This document shows, in pieces, positions 1,524 to 33,759 of a stretch of 64,000 bases of DNA. How positions within the stretch are numbered: position 1 is the stretch's first letter; every line of letters begins with the position of its first letter. Source of the stretch: Salpingoeca rosetta (Eukaryota > Protista > Choanoflagellata); the NCBI GenBank assembly GCA_033442325.1, contig JAWQFM010000022.1, positions 369,797 to 433,796 of the forward strand. Reading direction: 5' to 3'. Position numbers and translations under genes: made by a program. The notes below the pieces were generated by a model. It was not told the DNA's origin and made no database searches. It saw nothing but the letters and a program-made list of their open reading frames with translations.

Positions 1524-2006
1524 CTGTTGGTTGGGTAGTTTGGGGTCATGAGAAGAGTGAGATGGTGTTGATGGGAGTGGGAGGGTGTGAAAAGAGTGGG
1601 ACGGAGGCGAAAGGAGTGGGGCAGGTGTTGGTGCAACTTGGGACATCTCGATGTGAGATGCATGCACATGTACAAATATTACAATGCACATGCACACATG
1701 CACATCCACGCACACATCCACGCACACGCACACACACGCACACACACTCTCTCTCTTTCCGCCTCCCTCTGTCTCTTTGTTCTCCTTGTTTACGTCGTAC
1801 GATTGTAAGAGCTTGCTGCATGTTGCCTTTGCGCTGTCACCCTTTCTTTTTCCTCATCGTTTTCCCGTGGCTGCTTCTTGCTGCGTTTGCTTGTTGGGCT
1901 CATCATCGTCGTCGCCCATCATCGCTGGCTCCGGATTGCAACTGTATCCGACAGCACAATTATTTCACCACTCCTTCCTTCCTCCAAAACAACAACACTG
2001 GCGACG

Positions 2007-2642
2007 ATGGCGCGGCGTACTGCTGTGTTTGTGTTTGCGGCGATCGTGGCTGTGGCTGTGTTGAGTGGCAGTGCGGCTGCCAACTTCACCTGCCCTCCCC
2101 CTGGCTTCTCCCCCTTCAGCTGTCCCTGTGAGTAATACATCCATTCGTGTGCGCTTGAGAGCTTGTTCTCCCTGGATGCGTGTGCGCTTGCGTCTTCACA
2201 GCCGCGATTGTGCGTGAAATGACAGCACCACCACAACACTGAAGGGCACAATGCACACAAACACAACACACAAACACAAAACACACAAACACAAACACAA
2301 ACACAACACACAAACACAAACACAAACACACACACGCACGCACGCACGCACGCACACTCACTCACTCACTCACTCACTCACTCACTCACACACACACTCA
2401 CTCACTCACTCACTCACTTGCTGGCAGCGCTGGAGCGTCCACCGGAGCCTCAGGATGTGCTGCACTTGAAGCCAGGCAACATCGCGGCCGTCATGGCCCT
2501 CGGTCAGTGACGCAACCACTGTAGCAGTCGACTTCATGCACATTGCCACGAGGTCACGTGTGCAACCATCCACACGTGCACAAATATCCACACGTGCACA
2601 AACATCCACACGTGTACAAACATCCACACGTGTACAAACATC

Positions 2643-2687
<45 letters not shown>

Positions 2688-3787
2688 ACACATGCACACA
2701 CACACACCCATGCACACACACACACACCCATGCACACACGCAACCATATACACACGCACAACCACTCACATGTGCATGCTCGTGCGCCTTCCTGCATGCA
2801 GGTGACTCTATCACGGCGGGATTTGCCATGCAGGACGGCCCATTGGAGTACCGTGGCACGGTATACTCCACTGGCGGCGATGACGGCGCCTTCACCATCG
2901 GCAACTTCCTCTCCCACTACAACCCGGACATCAAGGGCCGCGCCAAGGGTGAGACCATTCCCCTCACAAAGGCAGGCAAGGGCCTCAACTTTGCCGTGAG
3001 CGAAGCCCGTGTGCGGGATGTCCCTGGCCAGATTCAGCGCCTCTCTGCCAAGCTCAACTCCTCCGAGTACGCCGACGTCAAGGACAAGTGGAAGCTCCTC
3101 ACCATCTTCATTGGCGTATGTTGTCATGCTCTGTTGTCATGCTCTGTTGTACCCTCTGTTGTGCGGCTGTCGTGTGACTCGACCGCTGATTTGCTTCGCC
3201 AATTTGTGCCATACACGCATCCACCTATCACCAGACCCAGCCCGCAACCACTCCCAACCACATGCGCTCGCTCGTTCACATGGATCTTCAAGATTACACA
3301 CACGCCCGCATGCACACTCATGCACACGCTCACGCTATTTTCCTTCCATAACAACACCCCCCCCCAACCACACACAGGCGAACGACATCTGCGAGTGCAA
3401 GAGCATGACTGCAGATCAGTTCCGCACACAGCTGACCGAGGCGCTCACCATGGTTCACCAGACATTCCCCAAGACCTTTGTCAACATCATGACCATCTTC
3501 AACATCTCCAACGTGTGGGACGTGAAGAAGGACCGGCTGTACTGCCAGGCCGCCGTGCCCATTCTGCACGAGTGCAGCTGCCTCGAGGCAAACGCGACCA
3601 ACCGCCAGCGCATGGACGATCTTGGCATGGCCGTCAACCAGGTGCGAATGCGACGCGATGTGCTGTTGATGCCCATTGTCTCCATTGGACTTCAGCGCCT
3701 TGACCATGGGTCATGCATGATGCCGCCAACACCACCACCACCACCACCACTCACGCGTTGGCCGCGAAACCCCCGGTTCTGTTTCGT

Positions 3788-28717: not shown

Positions 28718-30028
28718 AGCCCCTGTTTGGCAATGCCTCCACGTCATTGCCGTGGATTGTGTTTTGCTTTGTGCAGCTATTGGCTTTTGGCTTTGCGTTT
28801 GTCGATGTTCATGTTGATGACCCCTTCCCCCTCGCCTTCCTGCCGCTCCCTTGCTGGTCCCTGTTCTCCTCTTCATCATGTGTTTGCTGACTGTCTCTCT
28901 CGCATGCCTGCCGGTGCACCCCATCCATGCTTGTGCTCGGCCGCAACCTTCACCGCTGCGTTTTGCTGCAATGATGCTGCTTCTCCTTGTTCTACACACT
29001 TCCTATCTGCTTTGCTTTTCTGTTCTGTGCTCGGCTGTCTTCACCCCTCTCTTGATCGCTTTGGCCGTGGCTGTGGCCTTTCTGCTTGTTTGCCTCAGGT
29101 TGTCTGCGCGTGTCTGTGTGTGTCTTGTGTCTGTGTGTGTGTGTGTCTCTCTCTCTCTTGTGGCCTTTGCATTGGTGTGCTGTGTGATGTTCAACCCTGC
29201 TCCTCCTCCGCCTGCGTGCATCGTTCCGCTGTTGGGTGGAGTTTGTTTGAGAAGGTGCTAGCATCACACCACCGTCTGATTCTTGTTTGTATGCACATAC
29301 ACCAGTCCTCGACAGCCAGCACTGTTATCCACAGAGAGTATGTGTGTGTGTGTGTGTGCCTCTGTGTCTGTGGCTGTGTCTGTGTGTGAATACAGCCAGA
29401 CGACGTACACCTTGACACAGAAAGAGCTTGCAGCTTCGTCATGCACGACACGCTTGCAGGTGCAAGTGTCAACCCCACTCGCACATGAGGTACGTTGCAA
29501 TGAACAGGTAAAAATGATTTATCTGGACGTATGTGTGTGTACACACGAAAGCTGAGCTGAGGTTGGATTCGACAAAGAAAAGCAGCACACACACACACAC
29601 ATGTACACTCACATTTACACTCACACAAATTCGAACACATGCGTGTACACACACGCACACACACACACATATGAACACGCATGAACGCAGGCATGTACAC
29701 TCAAAACACACGTACACGCAAGCACACGCATATCAATTAAACCCGGACCGTAAGCAGTGTACAATCACATGGCACCATGGTACTAGACAAAGCCACACAG
29801 CCCGTGCGTGTTGAACACTGTCGAGTGTGGTGAGGGGGGAGGAGGCAGCAGCAGAGCAGTCACAAAAAGCACCAAAGGCAGGACTGACAGGGCTTGGGCG
29901 AGGGGAGACTTTGAACATATGGAAGACACATGCAACAAAGACAAACACACTTGCACCTGCACACACGCACAAGCGACTAAATGCACACAAAGAAACATAG
30001 ACAGACCAAACGCACACACGCACAGAAC

Positions 30029-30356
30029 TCAAGAAGCGTCTCCTTTCTGCTTGTGGCGGCGGGCAGTCTTGGGCGGCTGCGGTTGCTGCTGCTGCTTCTT
30101 CTTCTTCTTCTTCGCCTGCAACTTTGCGCGCTTTGCGGGCTGCTCGCCCTTCTTCGTGCCAGCGAGCGTGCGCACGGCGGTGTTGGCTTCCGTCTCTTGA
30201 AGCAACTTCTCGGCTTTGGCGCGAGGCACCTTGCCTGTTTCAATGCACTTGAGGCAGTGCCACTCTTTGCCCGGCTCCAACGCCTCTTCTTCGTTCATGC
30301 CCATGCTAACACATGAAAATGGTGGCAAGCAAAAAAAAGCGCGTGAGTGTGTGTGT

Positions 30357-30396
<40 letters not shown>

Positions 30397-30960
30397 TATG
30401 CGCGAGCGCGAGTTGATCTCAGCGTCGCGAATCGAGCGCGTATGTAACACACGTTGTGAGGGGTACAGTCGAAGCCTTCTGACTTCCATCTGCCGGCGTG
30501 ATTGGCAAAACGATCTCTAAAGTGTTGTCTGGACCGCTGCTCACGCGATCACGTTTCTATGCAGTCTTAAACTGGCGATCGACGCATGAGGTCGGTCTTG
30601 ACTCACGACGATGATTTATACACCAGAGGCGTACGTTTTCTTATCGTGGGTTTGACAGTGAAAAGGTCAACTCCTGTGTGTGTGTGTGGGTGTGTCTGTG
30701 TGTGTCTGTGTGTGTGAAAACGCGTGTGCATCGACGTGTGATTGTAATGGCACCCAGACACAAGTACACAGGCCATCCACAGAGGCCACCCGAAGGCTCA
30801 CCATTTCGCGTGGTACCAGGAGTCGCACGAATCGCAGCACACCATCAGCTTGTCTGGGTTGTACGGACGACGGCAGACGCAAAACTTCTTTGGCGGGCGC
30901 TGTGTCAGACACGGCAATGTATCGACACGGCATATGGTACGCGGGTGCGTGAATGTGTGT

Positions 30961-31022
<62 letters not shown>

Positions 31023-31305
31023 GTATGTGTGTCAGTATGTGCGTGTGGAAACTTAGTGCACATGTGTGTGTGTGTGAGTGGATGCACGCACGCAAGCAAA
31101 ATAAATGGCACAGACGAACGCATGTGTGTATTGGCACAGCAGCACTGTCCCGCGACAATACATGATGAGCCATCAGGATAGCTTTGGCAAGACCAACGTA
31201 CTGTGATCTTGCGTGTCTTGACGTTGTAGTTTGAGCGCCAGAAAAACGTCTGTCACACAAAGTCAGACGTAAGCGGAGGCTCTGATAAGGCATAACAACG
31301 CCTGT

Positions 31306-31344
<39 letters not shown>

Positions 31345-31636
31345 CATGCACATGAACACGAGCGCAATCCACACTGCCACGCTGTCACGGACACACCCAT
31401 GCCCACGCACAACAGCTCGCTCGCATACCGGGAGTGCCTGCCCGTCCCTGAACACTGCTTGGCCCTTCGCTTGCCTTTCTTCATACTCTGGCATGGGAAG
31501 CACGGCGCACAGGCCTTCGACAACACGCGCGCTCACAATGTCTCTGTGGTTGGAGCGAAGCACCTGTGTTTGTTCATGTGCGCATGTTTGTGTGTGTGTG
31601 TGTGTTCGTGTGCGCATGTTTGTGTTCGTGTGCGCA

Positions 31637-31732
<96 letters not shown>

Positions 31733-32420
31733 TGTGTGTGTGTATGAGAGAGAACACATGAGAGTGTGTTCGTGAATCGCACAAACCAGAAGCACGCTGC
31801 AAAGCACGCTGCATGCACCACAGGCACATGTGCACACACCTCTTCTGCGCCGTGGTGCTCCTGTCGACCACCCGGCAAGTCCTTCAAGAGAGAAGAAGTG
31901 TCGTGTGCATGCATGTGAGAGCTGGCGTGTACGTGCGCCACGCAAACAAACCAGCCGGATGCATGCATGCACTCAAGAGCATGCGTGCGCAATCACTAAT
32001 GCCAGCGTGACAGTACCTCTGGCCTGTAGAACCACTTGAGTTCCACGTACACGTCTCTGTCATTGTTGGTGAACACCCTCACAATGTCTGCAACATACTC
32101 CATTGACGATGCGCCCTGGCAAATTGCCGCGGGGCAGTGTGAGGACAGGCGACAGCAGGATCGATGACAGGAAACGGCTTGGCAGGCTCACGGTGCACAA
32201 GACCAGCAAACATGAAACGAACGCATTGCACGTACTTGAGCATACACATACGCGCATGCAAACACATGCAAACACATGCAAACGCACATGCACGCACATG
32301 CACGCATGCACACGTCAAGGATTGCCGTACCTTCACCAAGATGGTGTCGCCGCAGTTGAAGGTGACATTCCCCAAGTTGAATGAGGAGTACTCCCTGCTG
32401 TTCTCTGTGAACTCTGTCAT
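30029..32420 (-). CDS. BAH-PHD histone reader, EBS/SHL/EPR-1-like, multi-exon
   Basis: Spliced product: ..FNCGDTILVK|GASSMEYVADIVRV..VELKWFYRPE|DLPGGRQEHHGAEE|VLRSNHRDIVSARVVEGLCAVL..|TFFWRSNYNVKTRKIT|RPPKKFCVCRRPYNPDKLMVCCDSCDSWYHAK|CMGMNEEEALEPGKEWHCLKC, then a basic tail. The PHD exon is missing from the ORF track. Confidence 0.87.
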
Positions 32421-33759
32421 GCTGTTTGCTGCTGCTGTGTGTGCTCTGTTGACGCTTGGTGGGTCCTACTCAATGTGCGTTGCCTTTCATACAACCAGCC
32501 AAGAACCTTTTCCTTGCGCGAAGTTGCGTTGCGCCTCTCTGAAGCTGCGAGCCCTGTTGTTGTCGTTGCCTTCCAGTCTCGCGTATGCTGGATGTGCAGG
32601 ATGTTGTGAGCGTTGCCTTGGCGTTGTGATCGACACTGCTCGATGTCAGCAAGCCGGGGCGGAGAGAGGCGAGGCGGGAACCTTTGCGGTGGGTGGAGGC
32701 GTCGTGTAGAAGGCGAAGAGAGAAGTCAGAGGCGCGCGTCACGCTGCTCGAACATGCACGCAGCACCCCCCACAACGTCAACAAACAAGCAAGCAAGCAA
32801 AAGAAAGCAAGAAGGTGTCTCGAAACAACAAAAATCCCGCGAACTTTCAAAGAGGAGGTTTGTTGTTGTTTGTTTGTGGCGTTGTTGTTTTGTGGCCAAA
32901 GACAACACAACGCAAGAGGACGAGGACTGGCTCGTGTCGCCATACAATGTTAGAATGTTGCCTTGTTTGTTGCATTGTTGTTTTTTTTTTTTCGACCTCT
33001 CTACCTCTACAGCTCTACTCTCTGCCTCTCCTCCTGCCATTCCTTTCTAGCAGAGCATTTATTTGTCGACCGTTGAGCCTCAAGCCTCGAGTGGTGCGAA
33101 CTGAGTCGGTGTACATGGTGGGGTGCACGCAATGATGATCTTTTGCTGATCGTACATAACATACAGCGTCAGTTCATGTAGGTGTCTTGGTGGTAGTTGT
33201 TTTTCTCGCTGTAGTTGTCTTCCAAATTCATTCCTCTTCATCCTTGTCCCTTCCAGCTTGCCCCTTCTCCTTTAAACCTTTGAGCTGACATGATTTGAGC
33301 ATACACGCACAAGGCTGGACGAAAGTGTACAGTCATGAACTTGTTTCCTAGGTCATCACATCATGTCACAACCAGATACTCACACAACACAACACAACAA
33401 CCTTGTTTGTCGATTCACAAGCGCACTCTCTCACATCGTAGAACGAAAAATCAACAACGAGATGGAGATCGCCGTGACACAGTTGCATGGTGGAACACCG
33501 CACGACGAATCTTGTACAGGAGGACAACATTACAGTGTTCTCATTAAATCACTGCTCCTAGCCGCCTTCAACCCGCATCAAGAAGTTTAATGCAGTACAT
33601 AGCCAAGGGACAGGACTGGTGTGTGTAACACAAACAATCGCATATTCATGTACAAAGCACAACAAGCATGGTCATCTCGCAGCGTGTAGCATATGTAATA
33701 TTGCCTGAGAACGAACATGCAGTCGAGATCATGTCGCCCCAAAATAGACAACCCTCTCG

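What the first reader, a model, noticed from the sequence alone, without database searches (positions are those of the whole stretch)
30029..32420. Plant/fungal-type bivalent BAH-PHD Polycomb reader (EBS/SHL/EPR-1-like) in a probable close relative of animals
Seen only after hand-splicing: BAH EYVA..KWFYRPEDLPGGRQEHHGAEEVLRSNHRD and PHD FCVCRRPYNPDKLMVCCDSCDSWYH..CMGMNEEEA. Knowledge: Arabidopsis EBS/SHL (YVA..RWYYRPEES.GGRRQFHGAKELFLSDH; YC.CEMPYNPDDLMVQC..C.DWYH) read H3K27me3 through the BAH aromatic cage and H3K4me through the PHD. Neurospora EPR-1 is a related H3K27me effector. Both cages (Y/W/Y plus His; F/Y/M/W) appear intact here. Inference: a chromodomain-independent H3K27me3 readout survives in this lineage, whereas animals rely mainly on CBX/Pc and BAHD1/BAHCC1.
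Basis: partly seen in the sequence, partly recalled or inferred. Interest (0 to 1): 0.75.

Follow-up and report, generated by a model that had tools for sequence, protein, structure and literature searches.

The report
Choanoflagellate EBS/SHL-type BAH-PHD histone reader
This is a real, expressed seven-exon gene of the choanoflagellate Salpingoeca rosetta (PTSG_08191) encoding a small BAH-PHD protein of the plant EBS/SHL and fungal EPR-1 family, which makes it the obvious untested candidate for reading the Polycomb mark H3K27me3 in a close relative of animals that lacks the animal CBX readers.

Summary
Window 30029-32420 (minus strand) holds a seven-exon gene with GT-AG introns. RNA-seq reads from three runs confirm all six splice junctions. 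The product is identical to the 262-aa 'hypothetical protein PTSG_08191' of Salpingoeca rosetta. It has Pfam BAH (20-136) and PHD (145-191) domains.

Its best solved relatives are poplar SHL and Arabidopsis EBS, across both domains, by sequence (E about 1e-29) and by predicted fold. All residues whose mutation abolishes H3K27me3 binding in SHL are kept: Y37, W58, Y60, H83 and D85. The H3K4me3 cage of the PHD is kept too (F144, Y151, W166).

The genome encodes PRC2 parts. Its histone H3 keeps S28 and P30. Published work shows H3K27me3 in S. rosetta and no CBX outside animals.

Orthologues occur in at least five other choanoflagellates, a filasterean, Fonticula and a chytrid. None of the 30 representatives I could name was an animal.

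The family and its wide spread, with animals the exception, were described by Wiles et al. 2020. This is therefore a new, uncharacterised member of a known kind. Histone binding and repression remain inferred. No hand-joined exon model was sent to any tool.

The parts
32331..32420 (-). Exon 1 (CDS, 30 codons from the ATG at 32420); start of the BAH domain
   Evidence: GT donor at 32330-32329; spliced reads 32115|32331; identical to P0001 residues 1-30
32017..32115 (-). Exon 2 (33 codons); BAH cage residues Y37, W58, Y60
   Evidence: Pfam BAH E 0.0018 on this exon alone; junctions; cage mapping
31840..31881 (-). Exon 3 (14 codons; D-L-P-G-G-R-Q-E-H-H-G-A-E-E)
   Evidence: junctions 31881|32017 and 31563|31840
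31429..31563 (-). Exon 4 (45 codons); H83 and D85, the pair that in SHL locks H3S28/H3P30
   Evidence: 100% match to P0001; junctions; mapping
31202..31249 (-). Exon 5 (16 codons); last BAH strand and linker
   Evidence: junctions 31249|31429 and 30899|31202
30802..30899 (-). Exon 6 (98 nt, ends in phase 2); first half of the PHD finger with F144, Y151, M157, W166 and zinc ligands C145, C147, C160, C163, H168
   Evidence: Pfam PHD E 7.6e-7 on this exon alone; junction 30305|30802
30029..30305 (-). Exon 7 coding part (completes C171; C188, C191; predicted helix 199-219; lysine/glutamine-rich basic tail; stop at 30031-30029)
   Evidence: predicted structure
29800..30028 (-). 3' untranslated region (about 230 nt; end approximate)
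   Evidence: Same-orientation RNA depth continues to about 29800, then falls; read starts and ends cluster at 29769-29820
32421..32800 (-). Transcribed 5' region (at least 380 nt; upstream limit not determined)
   Evidence: Same-orientation RNA depth of 26-74 (bin means) and one 2011 contig run continuously across the ATG. An in-frame stop lies upstream of the ATG

Best explanation
The locus is the single-copy S. rosetta orthologue (PTSG_08191, 262 aa) of the EBS/SHL/EPR-1 family of BAH-PHD histone readers. The most likely mechanism has three parts. First, the BAH domain takes trimethyl-lysine 27 of histone H3 into a Y37/W58/Y60 cage, and H83 and D85 clamp H3S28 and stack on H3P30, which gives K27 rather than K9 specificity. 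Second, the PHD finger can take H3K4me2/3 into an F144/Y151/W166 cage, so the protein is potentially bivalent like plant EBS/SHL and unlike Neurospora EPR-1. Third, the basic C-terminal tail probably serves nuclear import or DNA contact. In a cell that has PRC2 and H3K27me3 but no CBX-type canonical PRC1, this protein would be the main effector coupling H3K27me3 to repression. Shown here: gene structure, expression, domain architecture, family membership, conservation of every binding residue checked, and presence of writer genes and the substrate motif. Inferred: histone binding, bivalency and the repressive role.
For: Splicing and expression. Identity to PTSG_08191. Pfam BAH 20-136 (E 1.5e-11) and PHD 145-191 (E 1.6e-10), both over the curated cut-offs. 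Best PDB sequence hits are PtSHL 5znp (E 2.3e-29) and EBS 5z8l (E 4.8e-29) across residues 17-198. The next BAH hit, BAHCC1 6vil, has E 9.6e-8. The AlphaFold2 model has pLDDT 88.2. Its best fold matches are EBS and SHL (E about 1e-20, target TM 0.77-0.87, about 188 columns, both domains), then the H3K27me3-bound BAH domain of BAHCC1; AIPP3 follows after Polybromo-1. Residue mapping onto PtSHL (PMC6013494; alignment): Y41/W63/Y65 map to Y37/W58/Y60, and H88/D90 map to H83/D85. Each of these abolishes H3K27me3 binding when mutated in SHL. In the PHD, Y141/Y148/W163 map to F144/Y151/W166, P150 to P153 and M154 to M157. All eight zinc ligands are present. The PHD also matches the H3K4me3-reading fingers of PHF2, PHF8, BPTF and DIDO1 (E 1e-11 to 1e-9). 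The genome has a VEFS-box (SUZ12 type) and an EZH2-type preSET CXC. H3K27me3 has been mapped by ChIP-seq in S. rosetta (PMC12572184). No CBX or PHC was found outside animals (10.1101/2020.03.18.997064). S. rosetta H3 keeps A-A-R-K-S-A-P. The gene is single-copy in the genome. The complex test with the H3 tail (residues 1-45) gave weak support: score 0.43, best of 3 controls 0.01.
Against: There is no binding or in vivo data for this protein, and no held paper mentions it. Three SHL contact residues differ: Q92 is V87, D95 is R90 and the H3R2-contacting Q156 is C159. Affinity or exact preference could therefore differ. Most EBS-bound genes in Arabidopsis carry H3K4me3 and not H3K27me3 (quoted in 10.1101/868117), so the in vivo role need not be mainly Polycomb. 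Plant EBS and SHL did not complement a Fusarium BP1 deletion (PMC8501951), so family members are not interchangeable. The complex score is in the range where passes are, by the tool's own counts, more often wrong than right unless the guess was likely beforehand. It may also reflect memory of the solved SHL/EBS-H3 complexes.
Confidence: 0.7

Rival explanations
1. It is an EPR-1/BP1-like monovalent reader. Only the BAH domain reads a histone mark (H3K27me2/3). The PHD finger serves another purpose, such as DNA binding or contact with SUZ12, as reported for Fusarium BP1.
For: EPR-1 lacks the PHD aromatic residues (10.1101/868117). The BP1 PHD binds DNA and BP1 binds Suz12 (PMC8501951). In most other opisthokont orthologues the Y151 position is Q, E or C. 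C159 replaces the H3R2-contacting Gln of SHL.
Against: In S. rosetta and Barroeca the full cage (F/Y, Y, M, W) is present, as in plants. The PHD's next-best matches are proven H3K4me3 readers.
Confidence: 0.15
2. It is a family member that works mainly outside Polycomb, for example as an H3K4me3-bound factor at active promoters, or as a reader of another methyl-lysine such as H3K9me3 or H4K20me.
For: Most EBS targets carry H3K4me3 and not H3K27me3. Other BAH domains read H3K9me3 (TNRC18) or H4K20me2 (ORC1) with similar cages. V87 and R90 differ from SHL peptide-contact residues.
Against: The His/Asp pair that selects S28/P30 of the K27 context is kept. Matches to the TNRC18 BAH domain are far weaker than those to EBS and SHL, by sequence (E 1.5e-4; ORC1b E 2.7e-4) and by fold (E 1.6e-10 against about 1e-20). 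Wiles et al. found that the family co-occurs with the H3K27 methyltransferase, and this genome has it.
Confidence: 0.1
3. The gene did not 'survive' vertically. A choanoflagellate ancestor acquired it from an alga or another eukaryote by horizontal transfer.
For: The S. rosetta/Barroeca/S. infusionum group does not join the other holozoan sequences in the free tree. A tree holding that trio together with the green lineage is not rejected (p-AU 0.53). The full plant-like PHD cage occurs only in this small group among the opisthokonts sampled.
Against: The green-lineage clade is strongly supported (99/91) and excludes the trio. Holozoan monophyly is not rejected (p-AU 0.36). Orthologues occur in both craspedid and acanthoecid choanoflagellates, a filasterean, Fonticula and a chytrid. 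The gene has six host-type introns full of the genome's own (GT)n repeats.
Confidence: 0.05

Closest known systems
Plant SHL and EBS (PtSHL PDB 5ZNP/5ZNR; AtEBS 5Z8L/5Z8N)
   Same: Small protein with an N-terminal BAH and a C-terminal PHD. About 31-34% identity over about 188 aligned residues. Best sequence and fold match. The BAH cage Y/W/Y plus the His/Asp lock is kept. The PHD cage plus Met and Pro contacts is kept.
   Different: The first PHD cage residue is Phe, not Tyr. Q92, D95 and Q156 of SHL are V, R and C here. The C-terminus is a predicted helix plus a Lys/Gln-rich tail with no similarity to the plant C-termini. The host is a choanoflagellate. No functional data exist.
Neurospora EPR-1 / Fusarium BP1
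   Same: Same family by the analysis of Wiles et al. Present in an opisthokont that has PRC2. Candidate effector of H3K27 methylation without a CBX-type PRC1 reader.
   Different: The Ascomycota proteins form a separate 100/100 clade. They are longer (about 330-540 aa) with N-terminal extensions. EPR-1 lacks the PHD aromatic cage, which is intact here.
Animal BAHCC1 / BAHD1 BAH domains (PDB 6VIL)
   Same: BAH fold with a Trp/Tyr cage and a His/Asp recognition of H3P30. Third-best structural match.
   Different: Only the BAH domain matches (E 9.6e-8, about 21% identity). The animal proteins are long, carry the BAH domain at the C-terminus and have no PHD finger.

Membership tests
EBS/SHL/EPR-1 BAH-PHD readers | One N-terminal BAH domain directly followed by one PHD finger | tested here: met
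   Pfam BAH 20-136 (44.7 bits, cut-off 30.8) and PHD 145-191 (41.3 bits, cut-off 24). The exons are joined in RNA.
EBS/SHL/EPR-1 BAH-PHD readers | Closest relatives by sequence and fold are family members, across both domains | tested here: met
   PtSHL E 2.3e-29 and EBS E 4.8e-29 over residues 17-198; next BAH hit 9.6e-8. Foldseek ranks 1-7 are EBS and SHL. The nearest Atlas clusters are named EBS or BAH-PHD.
EBS/SHL/EPR-1 BAH-PHD readers | BAH aromatic cage for K27me3 (PtSHL Y41, W63, Y65) | tested here: met
   Y37, W58, Y60. W and Y are nearly invariant in 126 family representatives.
EBS/SHL/EPR-1 BAH-PHD readers | His/Asp pair that recognises H3S28 and H3P30 (PtSHL H88, D90) | tested here: met
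   H83, D85. S. rosetta H3 keeps S28 and P30.
EBS/SHL subtype (bivalent) | PHD aromatic cage for H3K4me3 (PtSHL Y141, Y148, W163) and Cys4-His-Cys3 zinc ligands | tested here: met
   F144 (Tyr to Phe), Y151, W166. Zinc ligands C145, C147, C160, C163, H168, C171, C188, C191.
EBS/SHL/EPR-1 BAH-PHD readers | Co-occurrence with an H3K27 methyltransferase (criterion used by Wiles et al.) | tested here: met
   preSET_CXC (36 bits) and VEFS-box (27.2 bits), both over the Pfam cut-offs, in the same genome. H3K27me3 ChIP-seq in S. rosetta (PMC12572184).
EBS/SHL/EPR-1 BAH-PHD readers | Groups with family members in a tree | tested here: inconclusive
   It lies within the 100/100 non-Ascomycota group and pairs with Barroeca (99/92). 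The deeper order among holozoan, Fonticula/chytrid and green clades is unresolved. No non-family BAH outgroup was available by reference.
EBS/SHL/EPR-1 BAH-PHD readers | Direct binding to H3K27me3 (and, for the EBS/SHL subtype, H3K4me2/3) | not testable with these tools
   Only an unmodified-tail complex prediction was possible. It gave weak support: 0.43 against a best control of 0.01.
Animal BAHD1/BAHCC1 | Long protein with a C-terminal BAH domain and no PHD finger | tested here: not met
   The protein is 262 aa, with the BAH domain at the N-terminus and a PHD finger after it.

The most novel reading that the evidence does not exclude
PTSG_08191 is the principal effector of H3K27me3 in choanoflagellates and is truly bivalent (K27me3 through the BAH domain, K4 methylation through the PHD finger). 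[quoted passage not shown] The animal stem lineage would have replaced it with CBX-containing canonical PRC1, keeping only BAH-alone relatives. This could also explain the co-marking of repressed cell-type genes by H3K27me3 and H3K4me1 reported in S. rosetta.
Probability: 0.35. Interest if true: 0.7.

Novelty: new member of a known kind. Interest (0 to 1): 0.45.

Why it matters
S. rosetta is the main experimental model for the closest living relatives of animals. It has PRC2 and mapped H3K27me3 domains over cell-type-specific genes and retrotransposons. The 2025 chromatin study states that recruitment and readout mechanisms are unknown, and it never mentions BAH proteins or readers. No CBX reader exists outside animals. 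Naming one expressed, single-copy gene with every known H3K27me3-binding residue intact turns 'how was Polycomb read before animals?' into a direct knockout, ChIP and peptide-binding experiment. The family itself and its broad distribution are already published, so the result is a useful pointer and not a surprise.

Tried and rejected
1. The word-based homologue search with P0001, and then with a 16-sequence alignment, returned only 3 and 9 proteins. It was too insensitive to survey taxa, so the exhaustive representative search was used instead.

2. A reciprocal search of the genome with Citrus SHL and an Ascomycota homologue was uninformative. This gene is split into short exons, so unbroken PHD or BAH exons of other genes rank above it. 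The SHL-like BAH exon on contig C26 proved to be an ORC1-type gene (BAH followed by an AAA+ Walker A region), not a paralogue.

3. The Pfam BAH scan of the genome missed this locus for the same exon reason.

4. Supplements of Wiles 2020 and of the BP1 paper are not held. I could not check whether S. rosetta is listed among their orthologues.

5. AU tests could not resolve vertical descent from an old transfer.

6. Pfam found nothing in the longer flanking ORFs.

7. The scan's own notes gave only unrelated findings on this window, and a words search returned nothing to show because three of the words occur in no finding.

8. No hand-joined exon model was sent to any tool. Exons were searched one by one by reference. 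After the database's own identical protein, P0001, was used.

Full report
**Observation.** I placed seven exons: 32420-32331, 32115-32017, 31881-31840, 31563-31429, 31249-31202, 30899-30802 and 30305-30029. Every intron starts with GT and ends with AG, and the phases fit. Exon 6 ends in phase 2, and the first base of exon 7 completes a Cys codon.

Exon 2 alone matches Pfam BAH (E 0.0018, profile positions 18-48). Exon 6 alone matches Pfam PHD (E 7.6e-7, positions 1-25). Exon 4 was queried as a region of an uninterrupted 441-codon frame. It found one database protein at 100% identity: P0001, 262 aa, 'hypothetical protein PTSG_08191 [Salpingoeca rosetta]', with BAH and PHD precomputed. Its sequence is identical to my exon model. 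From then on I used P0001 as the reference for the whole protein.

**Expression and splicing.** I laid three 2026 RNA-seq runs of the same species and the contigs of a 2011 run on 29700-32800. All six introns are skipped by 17-49 reads per run, with CT..AC ends on the + strand. Where the tool gives shifted cuts, the shifted cuts coincide with my borders. First mates lie almost only on the + strand, as expected for a minus-strand RNA in the usual stranded libraries. Exon depth is roughly 10-60 (bin means) and intron depth is about 0.

Same-orientation coverage continues about 230 nt past the stop codon, to about 29800. It also continues at least 380 nt upstream of the ATG.

**What the protein is.** Full-length Pfam scan: BAH 20-136 (E 1.5e-11) and PHD 145-191 (E 1.6e-10), both above the curated cut-offs. 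Against all PDB sequences the best hits are:
- poplar SHL (5znp/5znr, E 2.3e-29);
- Arabidopsis EBS (5z8l, E 4.8e-29; 5z8n, E 7.2e-29).

These align as one stretch over residues 17-198, so they cover both domains. The next BAH hit is mouse BAHCC1 (E 9.6e-8), followed by AIPP3 (E 5.6e-5). The PHD finger on its own also resembles the H3K4me3-reading fingers of PHF2, PHF8, BPTF and DIDO1 (E 1e-11 to 1e-9).

An AlphaFold2 model built on a 66-sequence alignment has mean pLDDT 88.2 and pTM 0.75. Foldseek ranks 1-7 are EBS and SHL chains (E about 1e-20, target TM 0.77-0.87, about 188 columns). BAHCC1 bound to H3K27me3 comes next, and AIPP3 follows after Polybromo-1 BAH chains. The ESM Atlas look-alikes are clusters named 'chromatin remodeling protein EBS' and 'BAH-PHD domain-containing protein'.

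**Binding residues.** The SHL structure paper (PMC6013494) defines the contacts below. PDB chain numbering is paper numbering plus one, which I checked at six positions.

| Role in PtSHL | PtSHL residue | Residue here |
|---|---|---|
| K27me3 cage | Y41, W63, Y65 | Y37, W58, Y60 |
| Holds H3S28, stacks on H3P30 | H88, D90 | H83, D85 |
| Pocket for H3A25 | M31 | V29 |
| Main-chain contacts | R32, Q92, D95 | K30, V87, R90 |
| K4me3 cage (PHD) | Y141, Y148, W163 | F144, Y151, W166 |
| Further PHD contacts | P150, M154, Q156 | P153, M157, C159 |

Alanine substitution of Y41, W63, Y65, H88 or D90 abolishes H3K27me3 binding in SHL. All five residues are kept here. All eight zinc ligands are present.

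A 2026 review confirms that the cage plus the His/Asp pair is the shared mode of SHL, EBS, AIPP3 and BAHCC1. It also states that S28 and P30 set K27 apart from K9. S. rosetta histone H3, read from the genome, has the tail motif A-A-R-K-S-A-P unchanged.

The histidine that matters is H83, in the motif S-N-H-R-D.

**Cellular context.**
- The genome carries an EZH2-type preSET CXC (36 bits) and a SUZ12-type VEFS-box (27.2 bits), both over the Pfam cut-offs.
- Gahan et al. 2025 (PMC12572184) mapped H3K27me3 in S. rosetta over cell-type-specific genes and retrotransposons. They state that recruitment mechanisms are unknown. The paper contains no occurrence of 'BAH', 'reader', 'EBS' or 'CBX'.
- Gahan et al. 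2020 (10.1101/2020.03.18.997064) found no CBX or PHC genes outside animals.
- The BAH-PHD gene is single-copy here.
- The other SHL-like BAH exon in the genome (contig C26) belongs to an ORC1-type gene.

PTSG_08191 is thus the leading candidate reader of H3K27me3 in this organism, apart from EED within PRC2 itself.

**Relatives.** An exhaustive phmmer search of 1.84 billion representatives gave 2930 hits at E up to 1e-3 and 433 at E up to 1e-10. Of the best 150, 126 span both domains. The named top hits are:
- choanoflagellates: Barroeca monosierra (51% identity), Salpingoeca infusionum, S. urceolata, Helgoeca nana and Choanoeca flexa;
- the filasterean Pigoraptor chileana;
- Fonticula alba and the chytrid Gonapodya;
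- further out, plant SHL/EBS, many green algae and a separate Ascomycota group.

None of the 30 representatives I could name is an animal. This agrees with the statement of Wiles et al. that animals are the notable exception. It is a sample and not a proof.

A careful IQ-TREE of 45 sequences gives these supports:
- S. rosetta with Barroeca, 99/92;
- that pair with S. infusionum, 96/79;
- the Ascomycota clade apart from the rest, 100/100;
- a green-lineage clade that excludes the choanoflagellates, 99/91.

Deeper order is unresolved. Holozoan monophyly is not rejected (p-AU 0.36). A trio-plus-greens clade is not rejected either (p-AU 0.53). Vertical descent is favoured by the breadth of opisthokont carriers and by the six host-type introns, but it is not proven.

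One nuance deserves mention. Among the opisthokont sequences aligned, only S. rosetta and Barroeca keep the complete plant-like PHD cage. The position of Y151 is Q, E or C in S. urceolata, Helgoeca, Pigoraptor, Choanoeca, Fonticula and Gonapodya. Bivalency, if real, may therefore be confined to a subgroup.

**Complex prediction.** I folded residues 1-200 with the S. rosetta H3 tail (1-45, unmodified). The verdict was weak support:
- Score 0.43, best of 3 controls 0.01.
- The mark was reached by 51 of 78 solved complexes and by 2 of 108 mismatched pairs. At 0.60 or under it was reached by only 5 of those 78 solved complexes, and by all 4 mismatches that passed.
- The runs agree in at least 84% of their contacts, and the partner's pLDDT is at least 55.

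Like complexes (SHL and EBS with H3 peptides) are solved, so the pass may come from memory. I count it as a minor point.

**Comparison with what is known, and novelty.** Wiles et al. 2020 (10.1101/868117) identified EPR-1 and showed that EBS and SHL are its orthologues. [quoted passage not shown] I could not see their Fig. 6a or supplements, so I cannot say whether S. rosetta is listed there. No held paper mentions PTSG_08191.

NCBI annotates the gene as a hypothetical protein and UniProt as a PHD-type domain protein. This is therefore a new, uncharacterised member of a known family, and neither a new kind nor a surprise to a Polycomb specialist. Its value is practical. It gives the tractable choanoflagellate model a specific, testable H3K27me3 effector, one that keeps the bivalent EBS/SHL configuration and not the EPR-1 one.

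**Confidence.**
- The gene is real, spliced as described and a member of the family: about 0.95.
- The BAH domain binds H3K27me3: about 0.75.
- The PHD finger binds H3K4me2/3: about 0.65.
- The protein is a Polycomb effector in vivo: about 0.5.

Noticed in passing
window 30340-30395, 30940-31020, 31300-31345, 31590-31745: Introns 3 to 6 of the gene carry long (GT)n/(CA)n microsatellites, the longest about 150 bp in intron 3. The six-frame ORF lists are therefore crowded with Cys-Val and His-Thr repeat artefacts.
   Followed up: no
window 31052-31155 (inside intron 5): Low RNA depth (about 3-7) in the gene's orientation and about 1 in the opposite one. Loose read ends occur at 31059 in one run and an A>T difference at 31077. 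This may be a rare alternative exon, a retained piece or an antisense transcript.
   Followed up: no
window 32421-32800 and beyond: RNA in the gene's orientation continues at least 380 nt upstream of the ATG, at depth equal to or above that of the coding exons. This is either a long 5' UTR or an abutting upstream transcript.
   Followed up: partly
window 32257-32280 (intron 1): A few reads in all three RNA runs show a 24-base 'goes back' joint within a short tandem repeat (units of the type ACATGCAAAC). This looks like a repeat-number difference between the sequenced strain and the assembly.
   Followed up: no
L002 (G000:C26:494500-500500), minus strand, BAH exon at about 2846-3013: A second BAH gene whose first BAH exon also hits SHL best in the PDB (E 2.5e-5). 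Downstream exons carry an arginine/glycine-rich stretch and an AAA+ Walker A motif, so it is an ORC1-type gene. Its cage reads W-Y-H where SHL has W-Y-Y.
   Followed up: partly
L003 (G000:C21:790500-796500), ORF 1626-3554 +: A 642-codon open frame with a weak BAH match (E 0.0023, profile 36-118) and no other Pfam family. The identity of this third BAH gene is unknown.
   Followed up: partly
alignment A1 (P0005, P0007, P0008, P0012, P0013, P0025, P0028): In most other opisthokont orthologues the PHD cage tyrosine equivalent to Y151 is Q, E or C. In S. infusionum the cage Trp is Pro. The H3K4me3-reading half seems to have been lost repeatedly, while the BAH Trp/Tyr and the His/Asp pair stay invariant or nearly so; the first BAH cage residue (Y37) does vary.
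   Followed up: partly
L005 (G000:C22:738482-741859), H3 at 1483-1893 +: A canonical histone H3 gene lies on the same contig as the window, about 306 kb beyond the window's end, next to a divergently oriented histone gene (L008). This is a typical histone pair.
   Followed up: no
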